DNA of 64,000 nucleotides from Sminthopsis crassicaudata (Eukaryota). Location: NCBI RefSeq assembly GCF_048593235.1, contig NC_133617.1, positions 181,248,937 through 181,312,936 on the forward strand, written 5' to 3'. A program made the position numbers and the translations under genes. Below are positions 7,980 to 64,000 of the stretch, piece after piece. The notes under the pieces were generated by a model that was not told where the DNA came from, did no database searches, and worked only from the letters and a program-made list of their open reading frames with translations. Position 1 is the stretch's first letter. Each line of letters opens with the position of its first letter.

Positions 7980-9060
7980 AGGCAGCTAGGTAGGACAGTA
8001 GATAGAGTGCTAGATCTGGAGTTGGGTAGAACTAATTTTTTTTAAGAATTTTTTCCCCACATTATGTATGTATGAGTAATTTTTTATAATATTATGCCTT
8101 GTATTCATTTTTCCAAATTATACCCCCCCTCTACTCCCTCCCCTTGATGACAGGCAATCCCATACATTTTACATATGTACAATATAACCTAGATACAATA
8201 TATGTGTGTAAATCCACTTTTCTTGTTGCACATTAAGTATTAGATTCCGAAGGTATAAGTAACCTGGGTAGATAGACAGTAGTGCTAACAATTTACATTC
8301 ACTTTCCAGTGTTCCTTCTCTGGGTGTAGTTATTTCTGTCCATCATTGATCAACTGGAAGTGAGTTGGATCTTCTTTATGTTGAAGATATCCACTTCCAC
8401 CAGAATACATCCTCATACATCATTGAAGTGTACAGAGATCTTCTGCTTCTATTCATTTCACTCAGCATCAGTTGATGCAAGTCTCTCCAAGCCTCTCTGT
8501 ATTCCTCCTGCTGGTCATTTCTTACAGAGCAATAATATTCCATAACCTTCATATACCATAATTTACCCAACCATTCTCCAATTGATGGACATCCATTCAT
8601 CTTCCAGGTCCTAGCCACTACAAAAAGAGCTGCCACAAACATTTTGGCACATACAGGTCCCTTTCCGCTCTTTAGTATTTCTTTGGGATATAAGCCCAAT
8701 AACAGCAATGCTGGGTCAAAGGGTATGCACAGTTTGATAACTTTTTGGGCATAGTTCCAAATTGTTCTCCAGAATGGCTGGATTCTTTCACAACTCCACC
8801 AACATTGTATTAGTGTCCCAGTTTTCCCACATCCCCTCCAACATTCATCATTATTTGAAGAACTAAGTTTTAATCTGGTCTTCAGACATCTAACTGAGAC
8901 TCTAAGCAAGTCCACTTATCTTCTGTCTACCTTAGTTTCCTCAGATGCAAAATGAAGATCATAATAGCACCTACTTTCCAAGATTGTAATGAGGATCAAA
9001 TGAGATTATTGTAACACACTTAGTCCAGTGCATGGCACAAATAAGTGCTTTATAAGTATT
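7980..9060 (+). mobile_element. CORE-SINE split by an L1 insertion
   Basis: Head ggcagctagg..gatagagtgc at 7981-8035 resumes at 8859 with gttttaatctggtcttcagac and the CORE. Confidence 0.75.
8036..8858 (-). mobile_element. 5'-truncated L1 (ORF2 C-terminus + 3' UTR)
   Basis: ORF 8376-8915 reads CWRGCGKTGTLIQCWW...WNYAQKVIKLCIPFDPA (L1 ORF2 Cys-rich domain); TSD agaactaa(t/g)tttt at 8028 and 8859; TTTT/AA target. Confidence 0.95.
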
Positions 9061-11949: not shown

Positions 11950-12470
11950 TAAGGGATGGTATATATATTGGCACTTCATTAAAAGACCAGCAAATAATTT
12001 CAGAAAAACCTGGAATGGTGATAAGCAAAGTGAACAGAACCAAAAGTACACAATAACAAGATTATATGATGATCAACTGAGATGAACTTGGCTCTTTTCA
12101 ACAATGAGGTGATTCAAAGACAATTCCAGCAGACTTGGAATGGAAATTACCACCCATATCCAGAGAGAGGACTATGAGACTTAATGTGGATCATAGTATT
12201 CTCACCCTTTTGTTTTGTTGATGTTTGTTTGCTTGTTTTTCTTTTCTTTTTTTTGGTGTCCTCCCCTTTATCTGATTTTTCTTATTCAGTATGATTAATA
12301 TGGAAACATGTTTAGAAGACTTGCACATGTTTAACCTATGTCAGATTGGTAGGGAAGAGAAGAAAGAGGGACAAAAAATTGTAACACAAGGTTTTGAAAA
12401 AGTGAATATTGAAAATTATCTTTGCATGTATTTGGGAAAATAAGATACTATTTTAAAAAAAGAAAAAAAA
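11950..12470 (+). mobile_element. L1 3' end
   Basis: gatgatcaact..ggctcttttcaacaatgag, marsupial L1 3' UTR, A-rich tail. Confidence 0.85.
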
Positions 12471-21479: not shown

Positions 21480-21850
21480 GATTCAAGTTAATTCCAATAG
21501 ATTTGTGATGGAGAGAGCCATTTGCATCCAGAAAGAGGATTATGAGGACTAAAATATGGATCACAATAGAGTATTTTCATCTTTTTGTTGTTTGCTTGCT
21601 TTTTTTTTCTTTCTCATTTTTTTCCCTTTTTGATTTGATTTTTCTTGTGCAACTTGACAAATGGGAAAATGTTTAAAAGAATTGCATGTATTTAATCTAT
21701 GTTGGATTACTTTCTTTCTAAAGGATGGGAGGAGAGGGAAAGGAGGGAGAAAAATTTGGAACACAATGTTTTGTAAGGCTCAATGTTGAAAACTATCTTT
21801 TAATGAATTTTTAAAATAAAAAACTATTAGTAAAAATTTTTTAAAAGGAA
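21480..21850 (+). mobile_element. L1 3' end
   Basis: aattccaatagatttgtgatggagagagccat, 3' UTR and A-rich tail. Confidence 0.85.
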
Positions 21851-28270: not shown

Positions 28271-28569
28271 TATCTTAGCAGCTCTATTATACTAGTGTAC
28301 AAAGGACTTTTTCTAATATTTGTATTCTCAATAGACACCTCCTTCTCAATCTCCCATTAACAATATTTATAATTTTTATACTTATATTCATATATAATAT
28401 TTAGCACCAGTCACTAGGCTAAATTGGGGATAGAAAAAGGAAAAACAAGACCCTTGTCTTTCAAGAAACTCATTCTAATGGAAGAGACAATCTATATAAA
28501 AGGTTTAGTTGCAAGTCAGATAGAAAAATCTCCTTTTGGGTGAAGTGGCAAAGCAAATGATAATGCCTG

Positions 28570-28720
28570 TTATTTTGCATCATTTCCTTCAATAAGTCAT
28601 TCATTTCTGATGGCGAACTCTTTGAAGGTGCCAGGAACTTTGTTGGCAAGAACTTTTTTTTCTGGGTCTCCAGTAGTTGTGTCTATAGTTCTTACAAGAC
28701 CAATTACCAAACCGTTATTG
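28570..28720 (-). pseudogene. YBX3: Processed, decayed fragment of Y-box protein 3 cold-shock domain N-terminus
   Basis: Minus-strand translation GDPEKKVLANKVPGTFKEFAIRNE*LIEGND vs recalled human YBX3 [32 protein letters not shown] (15/22 identical over DPEKK..IRN); EKKVLA distinguishes YBX3 from YBX1 (DKKVIA) and YBX2 (DKPVLA). Confidence 0.8.
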
Positions 28721-28734
28721 GTGGTAGCAGTGGT

Positions 28735-28980
28735 CTTTTGTTCTCCAAAAAGGTCAATGACATCACAAGGACAATGTTTTGACTTGCATGTGATTTGGAT
28801 TTAAGTAAGGCACAGTTGAATAAAGTCATCAGCTTTACCTTTCTTCCAGAGTCATTGAAGTCTAGTGGTAAGGAAAAAATCAAGATGATTGGTAATGGCC
28901 CTGGATACAATGGATGACATGGATGTCATGGCCTTTCTAAATCAAGGTCATTTCCCAAGACTCAGTTTGTTTGAGACAAT
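28735..28980. mobile_element. Marsupial RTE-related SINE-like repeat (other fragments at about 10320-10380, 52765-52820, 54100-54290)
   Basis: aggtcaatgacatcac..ttgacttgcatgtgatttggatttaagt motif recurs in the window. Confidence 0.6.
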
Positions 28981-29389
28981 GCCCTTTCCAAGGGCTAGGA
29001 AAGAATTCGACTGCATACCTCTCCACAGTGGTTACTTCCCAAAATGATGACTATGGGCAGTTGCCTGGAAGCTGCCTCCACTAGACTCTAGGAAGAGATG
29101 AGGAGGATAAAACTATTTAGGGATTTATTCAATGCCAGAATTATACTCTCAGCAGTAGGGCAATAAAGACTCAGAATAACCTAAAAATAAATGAATGGAA
29201 GTAGAGCCTCTTTCTGGGGAAATGAAGCAAATAGGAAGAGCCAGATCCTACCATTCAATTAATCAATTAATCAACAGACTTATATGAAGCATGCAGTATT
29301 TTCCAAGCACTGTTTTAGACATTGGGGACACAAATACAATGAATGAGGTAAACCTTACTCAAAAGCAGTTTATGATCAAAGAGATCATA

Positions 29390-30045
29390 AAAAAGGAAAA
29401 AAGAACCCACAAGTGTAAAAATGTTTGTAGCCGCCCTTTTTGTAGTGGCAAGAAACTGGAAACTGAGTGGATCAATTGAAGAATGCCTGAAAAAGTTATT
29501 GTATATGAATGTAATGGAATATTATTGTTCTATAAGAAATGATCAGCAGTATGATTTTAGAATGGCCTAGAGAGACTTACATGAACTGATGCTGAGTGAA
29601 GTGAGTAGAACCAAGAGAACATTGTACACAGCCATAAGAAGATTAAATGATGATCAATTCTGATGAATATGGCTCTTTTCAACAGTGAGGTGATTCAGGC
29701 CAATTCCAATAGACTTGTGATGGAAAGAGCCATCTGCATCTAAAGAAAGAACTATGGAGACTGGCTGTGAATCAAAACAGTATTTTCACTTCTTTTGTTG
29801 TTTGCTTGTTTGTTTTTTTTAACATTTTTCCTTTCACTTTTTGATTTGATTTTTCTTGTGAAGCATGATGAACATGGAAGTATGTTTAGAAGATTTACAC
29901 ATATTTAACCTATATTGAATTGCTAGTTGTCTATGGGAGAGAGTGGAGGGAAAGGGAGAGAAAAATTTGGAATGCAAGGTTTTGCAAAGATGAATATTGA
30001 AATTTATATTTACATATATTTGGAAAAAATTTTAAACTGTTTAAA
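29390..30045 (+). mobile_element. L1 3' end (ORF2 C-terminus + 3' UTR)
   Basis: atgtttgtagccgccctttttgtagtggcaagaaactgg (MFVAALFVVARNW), then 3' UTR. Confidence 0.85.
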
Positions 30046-41900: not shown

Positions 41901-43139
41901 TGCTAGAGATAAACAGATAAAAATCAAAACAGTTTTCATTCTCAAGGGATTTACATTCTATTGAATCTGGAGTTTTTTGTGTGGGGGATGGAGAAGGTGG
42001 ATACACTTTCCACTGGTGCCCATCTCAAAACTTTGTTACTTAAGTGGATGATCTCTGAGAGTTGTTGTGGCTAAAAACCCCTCATCATTTGAACTCAACC
42101 TGGAACAGTGAGATTCAAAATTTATCTAGCTGATCTTTTGGGCAACAGATATTCATTTCTCCATCCTTAAACTCTTTCCAGGTCAGTAGGACCTAGGAAA
42201 GGTTGGATTTTACTGATAAAACCTTGAGAACCCAAAGACCCTTCTACACCACCATGAAATAGAATTGTTTTGGATGATAGCACATGAAACAGGTCAGGAA
42301 AAGTTCTTGAAGCAATCAACCCTGGTGAAATAATGCTTTATCTCATGCAATATGTCTATTCAAAACAATATTTTCTCTTGTTGCTAAGGCATATTGGTCT
42401 ATATGCTTCTTTGTTTCTTGTCTTTCTCTGTGTCTGGACAGCAACTTAGTTATTTTTTTCAAAGCAAGTGTTTCAGCTGAAATGAAGAGACTGAGGAAAC
42501 AGGTCATATGGGACAATACTATCATTCCTCTTGAAATTTTGCTAGCAGTTTAAAGCACTACTCACTTTCTTCAAAAGCATATAAACTAAATTATTATCAT
42601 TGGCCCCACATTTAAGAATGTCTTTAATAGAATTGCTAAACATCCAAGTAGATGATTATTTCTCACCTAGCTCCTCTGGCTTTGGGATTTCTCTGACTTT
42701 TCTACCCTTTCTCTTCCTTTTCCCCTTTTCAGTTTTCTTTTGTGTTTTATCCCCCAGATTTAGATTGTCTTGAGGGGAGGGATTGGGTTTTTTAAATTTT
42801 TTTTTTTTTTTGTATTTTGTATTCCCAGAGCTTAGCGCAGTGCCTGGTACTTAGTAAATGTTTATTAATATCAATGAACATTTTTATTAAGCAAGCTCTG
42901 TTACATGAATGAATGAATGAATGAATGATGAATGAAGAAAGCATTTATTAAGTATTTACTATATGCAAAATACTGTATTAAATACTAAAGATACAAATAG
43001 AAAAGTCAGTGTGTCTGCTCTTAGGAAGCTCATGTTCTAAAGAGGAAGACCACATGTATGGGAGATTTCAACTACAAGTCAGATGGAAAGCTACAATGAT
43101 CTTTAGGGTCCAAAGGCAGCAAAGTATATGATAATGCCT

Positions 43140-43300
43140 CTTTTAAAATATCATTTCTACTGATAAAATTCAGTCTCTAATGGTGAACCATTTGATAATG
43201 ACAAGAACTTTCTTTTCTGGATTTTTAGTAGCTATGGCTGAAGTATCTGCAGGAGCACCTGCCAGGCTACATCTCCATAGGGGTTGTTTCCCAGGATGAT
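43140..43300 (-). pseudogene. YBX3: Processed, decayed YBX3 N-terminal/cold-shock domain fragment
   Basis: Minus strand GNNPYGDVA/(1-nt shift)AGAPADTSAIATKNPEKKVL-[15-nt deletion]-VIIKWFTIRD*/(shift)FISRND vs YBX3 [11 protein letters not shown]...[32 protein letters not shown]. Confidence 0.8.
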
Positions 43301-43520
43301 GTCAGAGGCCTGGAAACATGGCTATTTTCAAGGTTCTTGAATTCAGAGTTATGAAATATCCTCCATCAAGGTCTGTGCAGAGATAGTGGCTTGACTTGCC
43401 TGGCACTTGTTGCCTCCTGTCTCTCCCCCTAGGGACCTTGCTGCTTTAGCTAGGCTGACTTGCCTACCTTGTATGTGGGATGGCTGGTCCCTTCTCCACA
43501 GGAGTTCCTGCTTCCTAGAT

Positions 43521-43624
43521 CAGGGCTTCTTAAACTTTTCCCATGCAAGACCTCTTCTTGCCTGAGAAAAAGTCATGATTTTGCCACCCTATAGGGGTTT
43601 TGACTCACAATTTAAGAAGTTTTG
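43521..43624. mobile_element. 104-bp hAT MITE
   Basis: TIRs cagggcttcttaaact / atttaagaagttttg; 8-bp TSD tcctagat/ccctagat (7/8 match). Confidence 0.8.
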
Positions 43625-45924
43625 CCCTAGATGATGGCTGGTCTAGAAGTAAAGGCCAGAGGTCTAGGGGAGCTACCATTTCCAGGACTCCTGTGTCTGT
43701 CTCCCTCTATGCCAGGAATTGTCCTGGAAGCTGGGGATATAAAGACAGAAATGAAACAGCCCCCTCCTAAAAGAAGTTTTATTTTTTATTGAGGGAAATG
43801 ATGTGTACTGATATAAGCATAGGCAAAAAATATATACATAAGATGGTATCCTAATTATTCATCATTACCTTCCTATGTTTACACATTGATGGAAACTGTT
43901 CAAGACTGGATTAATGGGAAATATGTTTAGAAGAATTGCACATGTTTAACTTGTATTGGATTACTTGCTCTTTATGGGAGGGGAAAGGTGGAGAGGAAGG
44001 AATATCAGTAATATTAGAGACAAAGGAAACTGCCCAAATTACATTTTAAAAGTAGGGTACATTTTTAATTGCTTTACTTTATCTGTCCACTTTGTATCAG
44101 CCAGTGTTAGAATTTGGAAATAAAAAGACAAATAGAAATTGCCCATCACCTCAAGGAGATTAAGTATTATAGTATTTCACTAACATAATTATGAGTAATT
44201 CCAAAGTGAGTCATGATCTTATCATTAATTGAAAAACAAAATCCCAACGCTCAATCATAAGGGAAGCATAGAGAAATGAAGCATATTTACCAGAAAGAAT
44301 CTTTCTGGAAGTAGCTGAACAAGGTCTATCTATTGCTTCTAGACTTGTGGGGTATTTTAAGGAGCATGGGACAGATTAAATAGAATGTCAAATTCCAGGC
44401 AATAGAAAGCTGAGTGAACAATTTATCACAATGACCCTCCCCCCAAAAATGCTTTTTTTGAAATGATTCTTCTGTGCTTTCGTTTCCTAACTTGATTCCT
44501 TAGTTTTTGATCTTTGAATTTCCTTTCTGGCAATACTGCCTAACATCTCCCATGCTTTGGCATTTGATCTCCTGGTAGCTGCCAGATATATTAGTAGGTA
44601 TCTGAGGCAAAGAGAAGGATTTTTTTGAGGGTAGTATAGAGGACAATCTAATGGTGGGTGCAATGGGTACAGATTTGGCCCTTTCCCAAAGAATGGATAC
44701 CCTTCAAGGGGAAAGGGGTCATGGGGAAGGCAGTTTAGTGATGGGGCTGGGTGAGGGAAAAAAGTCATGCAGTCTGACAGAAGAGGGAGAGGGAAAATAC
44801 TGTTCCCTCCTCCTCCAGCCTTTCCAAGGAGAAGGCATGTTTAGAGAGTATGTTGTCTGCCCTAATTACACTTCTGGTCATAATCCAGCTTTGAACTAGA
44901 TCATGATCTCATGTGCCCAGCAATCTTGTGCCAGATACCTCTGGCTACAGTTGACAGTAATATCTCGGTGTAGCTTCCCTTGCAATCTGACCCCAAGCAA
45001 ACTGTGAAGCTGACATAGTTTGTCTAAAAGGCTCTGCCCTCTTCTTTGTGTACCCCTTTTCACCTTTTAGCTTTCTTTCCTTGCCCAGAAATTCAGTGCT
45101 TTAGTGTACACCTTCCCTATCAGATGGATAATAAAGCTGATGAGTCACAAACATCTTACTGTGAATTAGTTTAATGTGCTCCATTCAGGAATAGTTTCAT
45201 GTTAAGAAAAGATCATAGGAAAAGGAACCCAGAGAAATGAAGCTTTAATACTGCAACTTCAGCCCCTGCAACATGTGGGTGGAGATATTTTCAGGCAAGA
45301 GAGCCTTTCTCCAGCCCTCATTACTCAACAGAAACAAACATAGACTCTGCCTGTACCTAAGGCTGACACCACAGAAGTCTGATATTTTTATTTCTATCGC
45401 TGAACATTCCCAAGCTGTCAAATTCCTAGTGCTTTGAAAAATGTCCACAAGAGACAAGAGATGTGCATTTTAAGTAGATCAGACCACATAACGAAGAAGA
45501 CAAGCAAATGGTATCAAATCCTTCCCTGAGTACTAGTTACGGAAACAGCCTCGGCAGGTGCTGAGGACTCCTGCAGATAGGTTTTGTTTGATTGTAGGGT
45601 TGGAAATGGAGTCTCTTTGCTCATAATGAGTATTTGCATAACCTTTGAACTTGTCTATGTCTATGGCAATGTTGATCTGGTTCATAAAGGTGGAGCTAGA
45701 AGGAGCTGGTTTATCCCTCTCTTCCTAGATTTTATAGATAAAGAAACTAAGACCCAGGGAGGTTAAACAAATTTCCAAAAGTCACAGAAGTACTAAATGT
45801 CAAAAGGCAAAGTTTATACCCCAGTATTTTGATTCTAGAAAAATGTTATTTTTATTGTGTGCTATGATACCTCTCTCTCTTCTGTAAGATGATTGTTAAA
45901 TTAACAAAGTCTAAAACTTCTTGC

Positions 45925-54000: not shown

Positions 54001-55317
54001 AGACTGGAATGCATGCCAGACACTTAGGATCTTGACTCTGGGAGTGTGGAACTATTCCTTCCTTGGTAATCCTGTAATATTTACCTTTGTCAAACCTTTG
54101 TTGTTGTTGTTGTTTGTCCTTCATTCTGGAAGAGGACCAATGACATCAAGAGTTTGATGTCTTGACTTGTAAGTGAATTGGATTTCAGTGAGGCAAAGCT
54201 TTGCAAAGTTATTAACTCCTTGAGAATCATCCACATCCAGGGGCAAGATCATTAGCAATGGCCCTAGTTACAATGGAAGATCTTGACCTTTGGATAAAAT
54301 TTTAAATAGTGAAGACCAAGTCAGATTCTTGGGACATTCCACCAGAGACTTCTTTCCAAACTAACAATAATTAAGGCCTTGTCTTTGGGTCTAAGTATTC
54401 AGTTACTTCTGAATCAACCTAAGTATTGAAGAATCTAGTTCACAATTCCCTTTCTTGTTCACATTACTATCATAAAAGACCTTGTTAAATGCTTTCCTAG
54501 AATTTGAGCAAACTATACCTAGAGTATTCTCCTTATCTACAAGTCAGATGACCCATCTGCCGGAGCCAGAGATTATCTTGTGGTTATAAATATGAGTGAA
54601 AGGATGATAATGCCTCCAATAAGAATAGGAAGTTTGGAAAAGAGGTTGGTATAGGGAGAAGATAATAAGTCTTTGATATAATGCTTTTGGGGAATGATTG
54701 TATTATGTATAGTGTTGCTTAAGTTGGAGAAAAACTCATTAATTAGTTAGCACACACTTTTCCAGGAGAAAAATTTGTTCTTTTGGTCTGGTAGGCAAAT
54801 GCTCAAATATTCTCTGATTGAGTTGGCAACGTGTTGTTCTCTTCTCAGTCTACAATATGCTTCATGAGATGAAGACTACAAATTTCAGTTAAGGATAACT
54901 CCATGTGGTTCCCCAAACTGGATAGTCCTAAGACATTTGTCCTGACTTGTCAAAGTTCCACACCCTATGTCTTCATGGACTGCCCATCCCTCATGACCTC
55001 AATAAGTCACCTCCCTTTCCACTGTTCAAAGATCTGAAACCCCACCTTCGTGCTTCAGCCTTTCCCAAAGTGCTGAAAGCAAAGTGACAGTTTCCACCCA
55101 TTACCGTCCTGCCTGAGCATGACTTTTCCACAACTAGCTCCACCAAACCAAATCCCCATAAATTGATATCAGTGCTTTATTTGGTAGATTTTGCTGATAT
55201 TTGCCATTCATTTTTCTGTTCTAAGTACCTATAATATACAAATGCAATGTTTCAGGTGATTTAGGGGAATTAGAGAAGTCCATCCCTCCAGTGAATTTAA
55301 AATCTGTGGGAAAGACA

Positions 55318-61675: not shown

Positions 61676-62151
61676 TGTAATGTTCTCTGTTTTGGTTTCT
61701 TGGGGTCTCTGGGAGCAGCCTTTGTTTCAATTCAGTAATTACCACATGAGCAGCCAAGAGTTAAAGTCCAAATCCTTTATTATCTCCTTCCTGGGTCTGG
61801 GCAGCTTTCTGGAGAGCCTTTCAGACTGGCCTTGGTCACAGTGGAGAAATGCAGGAGGAGAGCCTGCCACCAATGGCTTGACTGAAGATCAAATGAATGT
61901 CTGTCCTTGGTTCCAAGAGCTTGAGCTCCCGCCTGTCTTCTCTGGCTTCTGAATCTCCCCGACTTTACCTGGCTGAGGCTTATAGCTTATATGCTCTACA
62001 CTGAGTATAAACCACTCATTATATCACTAGGAAACCATTAGTTGTAGGATTAAATCAATCATACTGAACCATGCTAAACCATTGTCTCCTCAATTCCACT
62101 TAGCACCTTGTAAGCATCCTTGTTTCAAATTCAGAGTTCTGGCCCATAACA
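61676..62151 (-). mobile_element. Solo LTR, 476 bp, probably class II (beta-like) ERV
   Basis: TGTAATG...CATAACA termini; 6-bp TSD gggagg (61670-61675 and 62152-62157); minus-strand AATAAA and TATA-like motifs. Confidence 0.85.
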
Positions 62152-62309
62152 GGGAGGAAGTCTCACAGTGGAGAGCCCTGGCAGTTAGTATTCAGTAGAT
62201 TCTGGCACTTATAAGGAAAGATTTCTTTCTTTTTATGCTAATTGTAGGTGAGGATTAAGGGCACAATATTGAAGACTCTCCAGAAATAGGCACTATGATA
62301 TATGTGTTG

Positions 62310-62580
62310 AGGGATGGTTGAAAGGCAGAATAAATACTATGAATTTTAGTATATGGAAGGAGGGGAAGTAGACAGGATTTGCCCTTGGGGCTATGGATTT
62401 CATTGTGACTATAGAGAGAATGGAATGGGACAGTGTGAAAATGTGGACATTCTTGTCTTGTATTGGCTTCTCCAATTAGATAGAATGTGAGATCCCTGAA
62501 AGGAGGGACAATCTTGCTTTTCTGTTTTCTGTCTCTTATGTTTGGCCCATAGTAAATACTCATTCATTCATTCACTAACT
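62310..62580 (+). mobile_element. L2 3' end
   Basis: tagaatgtgagatccctgaaaggaggga...gtaaatactcattcattcattc. Confidence 0.7.
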
Positions 62581-63269
62581 TATTTTTATTCATCCATTTC
62601 CTGGCAAGTATGTACAAGGTATGTGTAAGGTTTGTGGTTTGATTACTAGTAAGTAACCTCCCAAACCCCAGCATATATCAGTACAGATACAGTGATAAGG
62701 ACTATCATAACAATATATTTCGGTGTTGTACAGTTTATCTGAATTCTCAGTTCTGTTTAGTACAGTTAATCTGAGTAACTGGCACAATCAAGCTTACTTC
62801 CAAATTTGTTTCCTCTGGCAGGGACATGGAGCCCTGGCAGTGGTGCAGTGAACACTTTGATCACAGGTACTGTTGATCCAGGAGACAGATGGTCTTCACA
62901 TCAGAAAATGTGATTGAAGGGAGATAGGAGCAACTCAGGTTAGAAAAGTGGAGAGAAAAGTGCCACTGAATGAGACTCTGGGGTGATGGCTTGAATCTAG
63001 ACAAAGGAAGAAGAATCTATGGCACAGCCACAGGGAGGAAACATAACTGCCTAGGGAGGACCCGGGTGTCTGGTATCCTGGAGCAAAGGTCTGATGCCCC
63101 TGCCCTAGTAATGCCCCTGCTAGGGCAAGGACAGTGCATAGCTTAATAATTGTTGTATCCCTGCTCCCTTAGAAGGATTTATTTTATATATGTAGAGCCT
63201 AAAGAAATAATTTTATCAATGGTCCTAGCTACATTCATAATTTAACAAGATGACTAGGTGGTGGTGATA

Positions 63270-63639: not shown

Positions 63640-64000
63640 TTATTACCCATTCTGAATTTATATAAGCCTTTATTTTTCCAAATATATGCAAAGATAGTTT
63701 TCAACATTTATCTTTGCAAAATCTTGTGTTCCAAATTTCTATCTCTCTGTTCCCTCCTTACCTAGATAGGAAGCAATCCAATATAAGTGAAATGTGTAAC
63801 TCTTCTGACCGTATTTCCATATTCATCATGCTGTGCAAGAAAAATCAGATCAAAAGGGGAAAAATGAGGAAATAAACAAATAACAACAACAAAAAAGGTG
63901 AAAATACTATCATTTGATCCACATTCAGTCTCTATAGTTCTCTTTCTGAATGTGATTGGCACTTTTCCAGCCCAAGTCTATTGGAACTAACTTGAATCAC
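63640..64000 (-). mobile_element. L1 3' UTR, running off the window edge
   Basis: ttttatttttccaaatatatgcaaagatagttttcaac..tttgatccacattcagtc. Confidence 0.85.

What the first reader, a model, noticed from the sequence alone, without database searches (positions are those of the whole stretch)
42905..43735. Composite retroposon carrying a processed YBX3 (cold-shock domain) mRNA fragment on an L2 3' tail
Seen: on the minus strand the element reads 5' decayed GC-richer sequence, then GNNPYGDVA..AGAPADTSAIATKNPEKKVL..IKWFTIRD..FISRND, then a non-YBX linker of about 90 nt, then the L2 3' terminus and a (TTCA)n end. Established: this matches the YBX3 N-terminus and CSD start ([42 protein letters not shown]). 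In Y-box genes this stretch spans exon 1-2 and 2-3 junctions, so the intronless copy is mRNA-derived. L2 mobilises SINEs through its 3' tail. Inference: this is not an ordinary L1-made processed pseudogene but a SINE-like family born by fusing a host mRNA 5' end to an L2 tail and then amplified, dispersing YBX3 5'UTR/CSD sequence through marsupial genomes. I do not know whether Repbase or Dfam already describe this family or its YBX3 origin.
Basis: partly seen in the sequence, partly recalled or inferred. Interest (0 to 1): 0.85.

Follow-up and report, generated by a model that had tools for sequence, protein, structure and literature searches.

The report
Known marsupial repeat MdoRep1 carrying YBX3
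This stretch is one decayed copy of MdoRep1, an already catalogued marsupial repeat copied about 120,000 times by the L2 retrotransposon; its body does carry a fragment of a Y-box (YBX3-like) cold-shock gene, and none of the papers I could search mentions that origin.

Summary
On the minus strand, 43291-43150 reads a frame-shifted Y-box protein N-terminus and cold-shock-domain start. A ~95-nt linker follows, then an L2-type 3' tail and a (TTCA)n end at 42905.

It is not a one-off. The window holds a second copy (29112-28345, minus) with the same junction. That copy keeps the ATKVLGT codons that copy 1 lost. There is also a probable third copy (62102-62577, plus).

Contigs from the source species and three relatives contain further paralogues about 81% identical to copy 1. 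Each relative also has contigs covering parts of this locus at about 90-95% identity, so the insertion looks orthologous.

The family is Repbase MdoRep1. Nilsson et al. (2010, 2012) list it as LINE2-mobilised, with about 120,000 copies in both Tasmanian devil and wallaby. Their printed consensus is collinear with copy 1. Translated, it reads [22 protein letters not shown], and all 8 PDB hits of that string are Y-box proteins (E about 1e-6).

What may be unreported is that its body derives from YBX3 mRNA. No searchable paper links the two. Assigning the source to YBX3 rather than YBX1 or YBX2, and the exon-junction argument, rest on recalled sequence and were not tested.

The parts
42905..42936 (-). 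(TTCA)n microsatellite, the 3' end of copy 1
   Evidence: Read directly. It matches the 3' end of the printed MdoRep1 consensus...AATAAATGCTTTATTCATTCATT.
42937..43054 (-). L2-type 3' tail of copy 1 (AATAAATG at 42949-42942)
   Evidence: Profile positions ~385-517 of the copy1/copy2 alignment hit about ten other L2/MIR tails in the window. By eye it is collinear with the MdoRep1 consensus tail. Nilsson 2010 lists MdoRep1 as LINE2-mobilised.
43055..43149 (-). Linker of ~95 nt between the Y-box part and the canonical L2 tail; its origin is unresolved
   Evidence: Conserved between copies 1 and 2 and present in the MdoRep1 consensus. The first ~12 nt may still be Y-box (I-L-K-E against T-K-E-D). 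The motif CCATCTGAC resembles L2 3'UTR as I recall it.
43150..43291 (-). Y-box (YBX3-like) segment: GNNPYGDVA / ..NPEKKVLVIIKWFTIRD* / FISRND. It has two frameshifts, a stop, and a 15-nt deletion of the ATKVLGT codons.
   Evidence: frames; deletion relative to copy 2; tblastn E 0.04 and adjacent FISRND.
43292..43505 (-). Upstream body of copy 1. It is repeated in paralogues and includes a ~90-nt segment (43302-43391) that some paralogues skip.
   Evidence: joints 43301->43392 and 43308->43392, and raised contig depth in bins 43372-43505. Copy 2 (29110-29011) and copy 3 align to part of it.
43515..43630 (.). Nested MITE-like element with 20-nt inverted ends; not part of the family
   Evidence: arms 43515-43534 and 43611-43630, 75% complementary. 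One search shows much higher contig depth here than in the flanking bins.
43705..43860 (-). Older, separate L2-type 3' fragment lying 5' of copy 1, truncated before its AATAAA
   Evidence: Weak profile hit at 43807-43705 (E 0.12). Read by eye.
28345..29112 (-). Copy 2 of the same family, split by a nested ~285-bp SINE at about 28725-29009
   Evidence: alignment through Y-box part, linker and tail. ORF ...TTGDPEKKVLANKVPGTFKEFAIRNE*; the only PDB hits are YB-1. E 1.4e-5.
62102..62577 (+). Probable third, more decayed copy, ending ...catagtaaatactcattcattcattcac
   Evidence: collinear nhmmer hits (body E 0.74, tail E 8e-4); local alignment to the copy-1 head scores 39 against a shuffle maximum of 32 (z 5.2), but only z 2.4 against copy 2.
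42815..42882 (+). Unrelated L2/MIR-type 3' end in the opposite orientation, tail to tail with copy 1
   Evidence: profile 445-513, E 7e-4, plus strand.

Best explanation
The stretch is a decayed, dead copy of MdoRep1, a non-autonomous marsupial retroposon.

Its 3' ~115 nt and microsatellite end are an L2-type tail. Its body carries an intron-free fragment of a Y-box protein coding sequence: an Ala/Gly-rich N-terminal region followed by the start of the cold-shock domain, most like YBX3.

Shown here:
- the composite anatomy;
- the same body-to-tail junction in two to three copies in this window;
- paralogues in four species;
- identity with the published MdoRep1 consensus, whose translation is near-perfect Y-box.

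Inferred:
- The founder arose when L2 reverse transcriptase, having started on an L2 3' end, switched template onto an abundant Y-box mRNA. An equivalent fusion would give the same product.
- The chimera was then amplified in trans by L2, through recognition of its 3' tail, by target-primed reverse transcription with frequent 5' truncation. This happened before and during the marsupial radiation.
- The Y-box fragment is a non-coding passenger. Every copy and the consensus carry stops and frameshifts.

How master copies were transcribed is unknown. No tRNA, 7SL, 5S or snRNA head was found.
For: Frames and anatomy.

Second copy with the same junction. It retains EKKVLANKVPGTFKEFAIRN (E 1.4e-5). 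Its only PDB hits are three YB-1 chains.

Third copy.

Paralogues (table 8). In organism A, contigs of 3215, 1650, 771 and 2096 nt each match 43199/43202-43300/43301 with 18-20 differences. Three to four such contigs are listed for each of organisms B, C and D. Joints 43090->43198 and 43089->43199 show tail-side and Y-box-side sequence on one contig.

Orthologous locus: present in B, C and D (records 18, 25, 15).

Family identity:
- MdoRep1 named among LINE2-mobilised systems (PMC2910653).
- 119,520 copies in devil and 124,233 in wallaby (PMC3403934). That is about 1 per 25 kb, which fits 2-3 copies in 64 kb.
- the printed consensus is collinear by eye with copy 1, from CAGCCACAGCTACTGAAGACCCAGAAAAG to AATAAATGCTTTATTCATT.
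- its translation hits only Y-box proteins (8 of 8, E 1e-6 to 4e-6).
-, marker 08: the same insertion, including the Y-box part, is aligned in opossums, Caenolestes, Dromiciops and Australian orders.

No small-RNA head.
Against: - The consensus could not be aligned by computation, because it has no reference id and was not pasted. Collinearity with copy 1 is by eye.
- The printed consensus has one extra base inside EKK-V-L. Copies 1 and 2 and the marker-08 copies lack it, so I put X there.
- The YBX3 assignment (EDxEKKVL and GN.P.GD..A upstream) rests on my recollection of human YBX3. PDB holds only YB-1 and YBX2 domains. YB-1 reads DKKVI at that point.
- Copy-1 pieces alone are not significant.
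- The microsatellite unit (TTCA)n is the complement of the (TGAA)n that I recall for canonical L2.
- Contig depth is not a copy number (tool caveat).
Confidence: 0.88

Rival explanations
1. The Y-box fragment sits in the 3'UTR of an autonomous marsupial L2 subfamily. What is catalogued as MdoRep1 would then be simply the 5'-truncated 3' ends of that LINE, not a stand-alone SINE-like unit.
For: Copy 1 is preceded on the same strand by another L2-type 3' fragment (43860-43705). Copies have different 5' ends, as LINE truncation gives. No pol III head was found.
Against: The upstream L2 fragment repeats the same tail region instead of continuing an ORF2 or 3'UTR into the Y-box part. There is no reverse-transcriptase ORF between 43300 and 44300 (one search lists none). 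Published work treats MdoRep1 as a LINE2-mobilised SINE or non-autonomous element.
Confidence: 0.08
2. It is an ordinary one-off processed pseudogene of a Y-box gene that happens to lie next to an unrelated L2 fragment, or a local segmental duplication of such a pair.
For: The copy is short and decayed. L2/MIR tails are common in the window.
Against: Two to three copies share the same junction. Paralogous contigs occur in four species. A published family consensus spans the junction. There is no poly(A), and the mRNA 3' end is absent. The flanks of copies 1 and 2 do not align.
Confidence: 0.01
3. The resemblance to Y-box proteins is chance similarity in a low-complexity repeat.
For: Copy-1 pieces alone give no PDB or Pfam hit at E<=10. 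The protein atlas gave nothing.
Against: Copy 2 scores E 1.4e-5 in the window-wide scan, and the two best hits of that scan are the two copies. The consensus translation hits 8 of 8 Y-box proteins at E~1e-6, with 15 of 16 identities across [15 protein letters not shown].
Confidence: 0.01

Closest known systems
MdoRep1 (Repbase; marsupial LINE2-mobilised retroposon)
   Same: It is collinear with the printed consensus through the Y-box-like body, the linker, the L2-type tail and the ...AATAAATGCTTT(A/C)TTCATT end. The copy density matches about 120,000 copies per genome.
   Different: None as to membership. This copy has a 15-nt deletion, frameshifts, a nested MITE-like element and a ~90-nt segment that some paralogues lack. 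The two papers that name MdoRep1 say nothing about a Y-box or YBX3 origin.
MIR / THER1_MD and other L2-tailed CORE-SINEs
   Same: They are non-autonomous, carry an L2-type 3' tail, and are mobilised by L2.
   Different: Those have a tRNA-derived head and a CORE domain (Background). Here no tRNA or small-RNA head was found, and the body is derived from protein-coding sequence.
L1-made processed pseudogenes and template-switch chimeric retrocopies (own knowledge)
   Same: An intron-free copy of a host mRNA made by a LINE reverse transcriptase. Template switching is the inferred way the chimera formed.
   Different: Those end in poly(A), keep the mRNA 3' end and are essentially single events. This one ends in an L2 tail, keeps only the 5' coding part, and was amplified to a very large family.
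SINEs with unusual heads (snRNA-derived SINEU, rRNA-derived SINE28; titles seen) and platypus snoRNA-RTE retroposons (own knowledge)
   Same: A host RNA fused to a LINE-recognised 3' tail and then amplified.
   Different: Those heads are small non-coding RNAs, some with their own promoters. Here the host part is a protein-coding mRNA fragment.

Membership tests
MdoRep1 | Sequence collinear with the family consensus across body and tail | tested here: met
   By-eye alignment of 43245-42905 (minus) to the consensus printed in the PMC2910653 supplement. For example CTTTTCTATTTGTATC is 16/16, and GAAAAGAAAG and AATAAATGCTTT are identical. It was not computed, because the consensus has no reference id.
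MdoRep1 | Interspersed, high copy number (about 120,000 per dasyurid or macropod genome) | tested here: met
   Two certain and one probable copy in 64 kb. Several distinct paralogous contigs at ~81% identity in each of four species (table 8).
MdoRep1 | Present across marsupial orders | tested here: met
   The marker 08 alignment shows one insertion shared by Didelphimorphia, Paucituberculata, Microbiotheria and Australian orders. One search shows paralogues and the orthologous locus in three coded relatives.
L2-mobilised element (L2-type 3' tail) | 3' end homologous to L2/MIR 3' ends | tested here: met
   The tail profile finds about ten other such tails on both strands of the window. The literature assigns the family to LINE2.
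L2-mobilised element (L2-type 3' tail) | Canonical (TGAA)n terminal microsatellite (as I recall it for L2) | tested here: not met
   Copies 1 and 3 and the MdoRep1 consensus end in (TTCA)n, the complementary unit. The end of copy 2 looks more like decayed (TGAA)n.
SINE in the strict sense | Head derived from tRNA, 7SL, 5S or snRNA with an internal pol III promoter | tested here: not met
   ARAGORN found 0 genes and Rfam gave no such match in 42800-43900. The true 5' end of the family consensus was not available.
L1-type processed pseudogene | Poly(A) tail, mRNA 3' end retained, unique locus | tested here: not met
   It ends in an L2 tail plus (TTCA)n. Only the N-terminal coding part is present. 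There are multiple copies.
Y-box protein gene derivative | Start of the cold-shock domain (KKV.[15 protein letters not shown]) | tested here: met
   Copy 2: E 1.4e-5, and YB-1 is its only PDB hit. Consensus: 8 of 8 hits are Y-box proteins, E~1e-6.
YBX3 specifically | Paralogue-specific N-terminal sequence (..GNPGGDAA....SEDAEKKVL) | tested here: inconclusive
The copies and consensus read GN.P.GD.A and (T)EDPEKKVL. YB-1 in PDB reads GGDKKVI. No tool supplied it.
mRNA-derived (processed) origin | Contiguity across exon-exon junctions of the source gene | not testable with these tools
   No marsupial YBX3 gene or mRNA could be fetched. That Y-box cold-shock domains are split over several small exons is recalled knowledge. 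A literature search for it gave nothing usable.

The most novel reading that the evidence does not exclude
The body of MdoRep1, one of the commoner marsupial repeats at about 120,000 copies, derives from the 5' coding part of YBX3 mRNA fused to an L2 tail, and this origin has not been reported. That would make it a rare case of a protein-coding mRNA fragment turned into a very high-copy, L2-driven retroposon family that predates the marsupial radiation.
Probability: 0.45. Interest if true: 0.55.

Novelty: already known. Interest (0 to 1): 0.35.

Why it matters
As a genomic feature this is ordinary: one old copy of a catalogued repeat.

The useful residue is an annotation point. MdoRep1 has been treated as an L2-mobilised element of unstated origin. 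Its consensus encodes a near-perfect Y-box N-terminus and cold-shock-domain start.

If unreported, that gives three things:
- a dated example, before the marsupial crown group, of a sequence-specific LINE (L2) capturing and mass-amplifying a host mRNA fragment;
- an explanation for spurious YBX3-like hits in marsupial genome annotation;
- the open question of how a family without a pol III head reached about 10^5 copies.

Tried and rejected
- PDB phmmer and Pfam with copy-1 peptide pieces alone gave no hits at E<=10.
- The protein atlas with the copy-2 ORF gave no usable hit.
- I tried to reach more marsupial DNA through an L1 ORF2 fragment of the window. It returned only short ENA contigs (under 4 kb) and UniRef entries of Sarcophilus, so there was no route to further genomic copies.
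- No tool could supply a YBX3 protein or mRNA. The length window of the protein search excludes full-length hits for a short query. A peptide-string literature search found nothing.
- Gentles et al. 2007 (PMC1899126), which probably describes MdoRep1, is not held.
- Literature searches linking YBX3, CSDA, dbpA or Y-box with SINE, L2, Repbase or marsupial found no relevant paper. The exon-structure search was unproductive.
- Weak profile hits at 62833-62903 and elsewhere were read and dismissed.
- I first thought all three copies sit directly behind older L2/MIR tails. Only copy 1 has weak profile support for that, so the idea is dropped.
- The MdoRep1 consensus was not pasted into any script, so no computed identity to it is given.
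Full report
**What is there.** Read on the minus strand, the stretch contains, 5' to 3':
- an older L2-type 3' fragment (about 43860-43705);
- about 400 nt of GC-richer sequence, interrupted by a 116-bp MITE-like element with 20-nt inverted ends (43515-43630);
- a Y-box-like segment (43291-43150);
- a ~95-nt linker (43149-43055);
- an L2-type 3' tail with AATAAATG at 42949-42942;
- a (TTCA)n run ending at 42905.

**Is the Y-box resemblance real?** Copy-1 pieces alone are too broken to score. PDB phmmer and Pfam found nothing at E<=10.

A local blastn of the region against the whole window found a second copy on the same strand at about 28684-28512. Read out, it contains an open stretch ...TTGDPEKKVLANKVPGTFKEFAIRNE*. 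It therefore keeps the ATKVLGT codons that copy 1 lost through a 15-nt deletion (alignment).

The only three PDB sequences that the copy-2 ORF hits are YB-1 chains, aligned at the very start of the cold-shock domain. The resemblance is not chance.

**Is it a family?** Copies 1 and 2 align from upstream of the Y-box part, through the linker, into the L2-type tail. Their flanks do not align. This is therefore a shared composite, not a local duplication.

Copy 2 is split by a nested ~285-bp SINE (about 29009-28725). Its upstream piece (29110-29011) aligns with copy 1 around 43330-43260.

A third, more decayed copy lies on the plus strand at about 62102-62577. Its body and tail hits are collinear, it ends in the same catagtaaatact...(TCAT)n, and its local alignment to the copy-1 head scores z 5.2 over shuffles. 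It is weaker against copy 2 (z 2.4).

I laid Logan contigs of the source species and three related species on 42300-44300 at 80% likeness. In each species several different contigs match 43199/43202-43300/43308 with 16-20 differences. For organism A these are contigs of 3215, 1650, 771 and 2096 nt. They are paralogous copies about 81% identical.

Joints 43090->43198 and 43089->43199 show that such contigs carry both tail-side and Y-box-side sequence.

Summed contig depth over the element is tens of times the single-copy flank in all four species. The tool warns that this figure is not a copy number.

The relatives also have contigs covering parts of this locus at about 90-95% identity (records 18, 25, 15), so the insertion predates their split.

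**Which family?** Nilsson et al. 2012 (PMC3403934) list MdoRep1 among marsupial SINEs and non-autonomous LINEs. They count 119,520 copies in the Tasmanian devil and 124,233 in the wallaby, about one per 25 kb. That is the density seen in this window.

Nilsson et al. 2010 (PMC2910653) name MdoRep1 as LINE2-mobilised. Their Dataset S1 prints the consensus in two marker alignments.

Reverse-complemented, the marker-08 consensus reads ...CAGCCACAGCTACTGAAGACCCAGAAAAGAAAG(C)TTCTTGCCACCAAAGTCCTTGGCACTGTCAAATGGTTCAACATCAGAAACTGATATGATTTTATCAGTGGAAATGACATTAAAGAAGAGGCATTACCATCTGCTTTGCC... It runs on through CCTTTCCATCTGACTTGCAGCTGAAACC and the L2-type tail to AATAA(A)TGCTTTATTCATTCATT.

Copy 1 is collinear with this throughout, by eye. 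I did not paste the consensus into a script, so no computed identity is given.

Translated, the consensus gives A-T-A-T-E-D-P-E-K-K-(V)[28 protein letters not shown]. One extra base in the printed consensus inside K-V-L is absent from copies 1 and 2 and from the marker copies, so I put X there.

That 27-residue string hits eight PDB sequences, all of them Y-box proteins (YB-1, zebrafish YB-1, YBX2), at E 1e-6 to 4e-6. Identity is 15 of 16 over [15 protein letters not shown].

Marker 08 is one MdoRep1 insertion, Y-box part included. It is aligned in opossums, Caenolestes, Dromiciops and Australian orders. The family was therefore active before the marsupial crown radiation.

**Which Y-box gene, and was it mRNA?** The copies and consensus read (T)EDPEKKVL, and further upstream GN.P.GD.A. 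YB-1 reads GGDKKVI at the same place.

As I recall human YBX3 (..[33 protein letters not shown]..), the fit is to YBX3. No tool could supply a YBX3 sequence, so this stays a well-founded inference.

It is also recalled knowledge, not tested here, that Y-box cold-shock domains are split over several small exons. On that basis the contiguous EKKVL...FINRND stretch would imply a processed template.

Whether the ~95-nt linker is further decayed Y-box sequence or L2 3'UTR is unresolved. Whether the family reaches the mRNA cap is also unresolved.

**How it works.** Shown: a non-autonomous composite with an L2-type tail, variable 5' ends, many copies, and stops and frameshifts in every copy and in the consensus. 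The Y-box part is therefore a non-coding passenger.

Inferred:
- The founder arose by template switching of L2 reverse transcriptase from an L2 3' end onto an abundant Y-box mRNA.
- L2 then copied the chimera in trans by recognising its tail, through target-primed reverse transcription with 5' truncation.

No tRNA, 7SL, 5S or snRNA head is present in copy 1. How master copies were transcribed is open. Possibilities are a pol II promoter carried in the gene's 5' region, or read-through.

The main rival is that this is the 3'UTR of an autonomous L2 subfamily. It is not excluded, but neither the window nor the literature supports it.

**Novelty.** The feature is a member of a known family. Only two papers in the searchable library name MdoRep1, and neither mentions a Y-box origin. 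Searches pairing YBX3, CSDA, dbpA or Y-box with SINE, L2, Repbase or marsupial found nothing relevant.

Repbase Reports, Dfam notes and Gentles et al. 2007 could not be read. I therefore cannot say that the origin is unreported, only that I found no report.

I had found it independently.

Noticed in passing
window 43515-43630: A 116-bp MITE-like element with 20-nt inverted ends (CTAGATCAGGGCTTCTTAAA / TTTAAGAAGTTTTGCCCTAG) is nested in copy 1. Its contig depth is far above that of the flanking bins in all four species.
   Followed up: partly
window 43908-44041: A very high-copy repeat piece. Summed contig depth is about 1.5-2.7 million against a single-copy ~30-50. It has relatives at 21652-21748, 29876-29939, 12293-12335 and 63768-63818 in the window.
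   Followed up: partly
window 28725-29009: A SINE of ~285 bp is nested inside copy 2 of MdoRep1, so it is younger than that copy. A relative lies at 54138-54280. I did not identify its family.
   Followed up: partly
window 42825-42905 (minus): Weak Rfam matches to mir-325 and mir-1271 precursors (21-23 bits, far below the gathering scores of 80-89). They lie beside the 3' end of copy 1, over the opposite-strand L2/MIR-type tail. Most likely they only reflect L2-derived sequence.
   Followed up: no
window 43308-43405: In a contig of organism B that covers this locus, this segment is replaced by 109 other letters. A contig of organism C shows a similar break. Some paralogues in organism A skip 43302-43391. 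Yet copy 3 aligns to part of it. The segment is indel-polymorphic or partly duplicated, and I did not resolve it.
   Followed up: partly
window 8376-8915 (minus): A 179-aa ORF that is an L1 ORF2 C-terminal fragment. The named relatives in the protein search are mostly Sarcophilus harrisii UniRef entries, which fits a dasyurid genome.
   Followed up: partly
window 28345-28370 compared with 42905-42936 and 62555-62577: Copies 1 and 3 end in (TTCA)n, like the MdoRep1 consensus. Copy 2 ends ATAAATATTGTTAATGGGAG, closer to the (TGAA)n-type L2 end that I recall. This may mark two tail subtypes.
   Followed up: no
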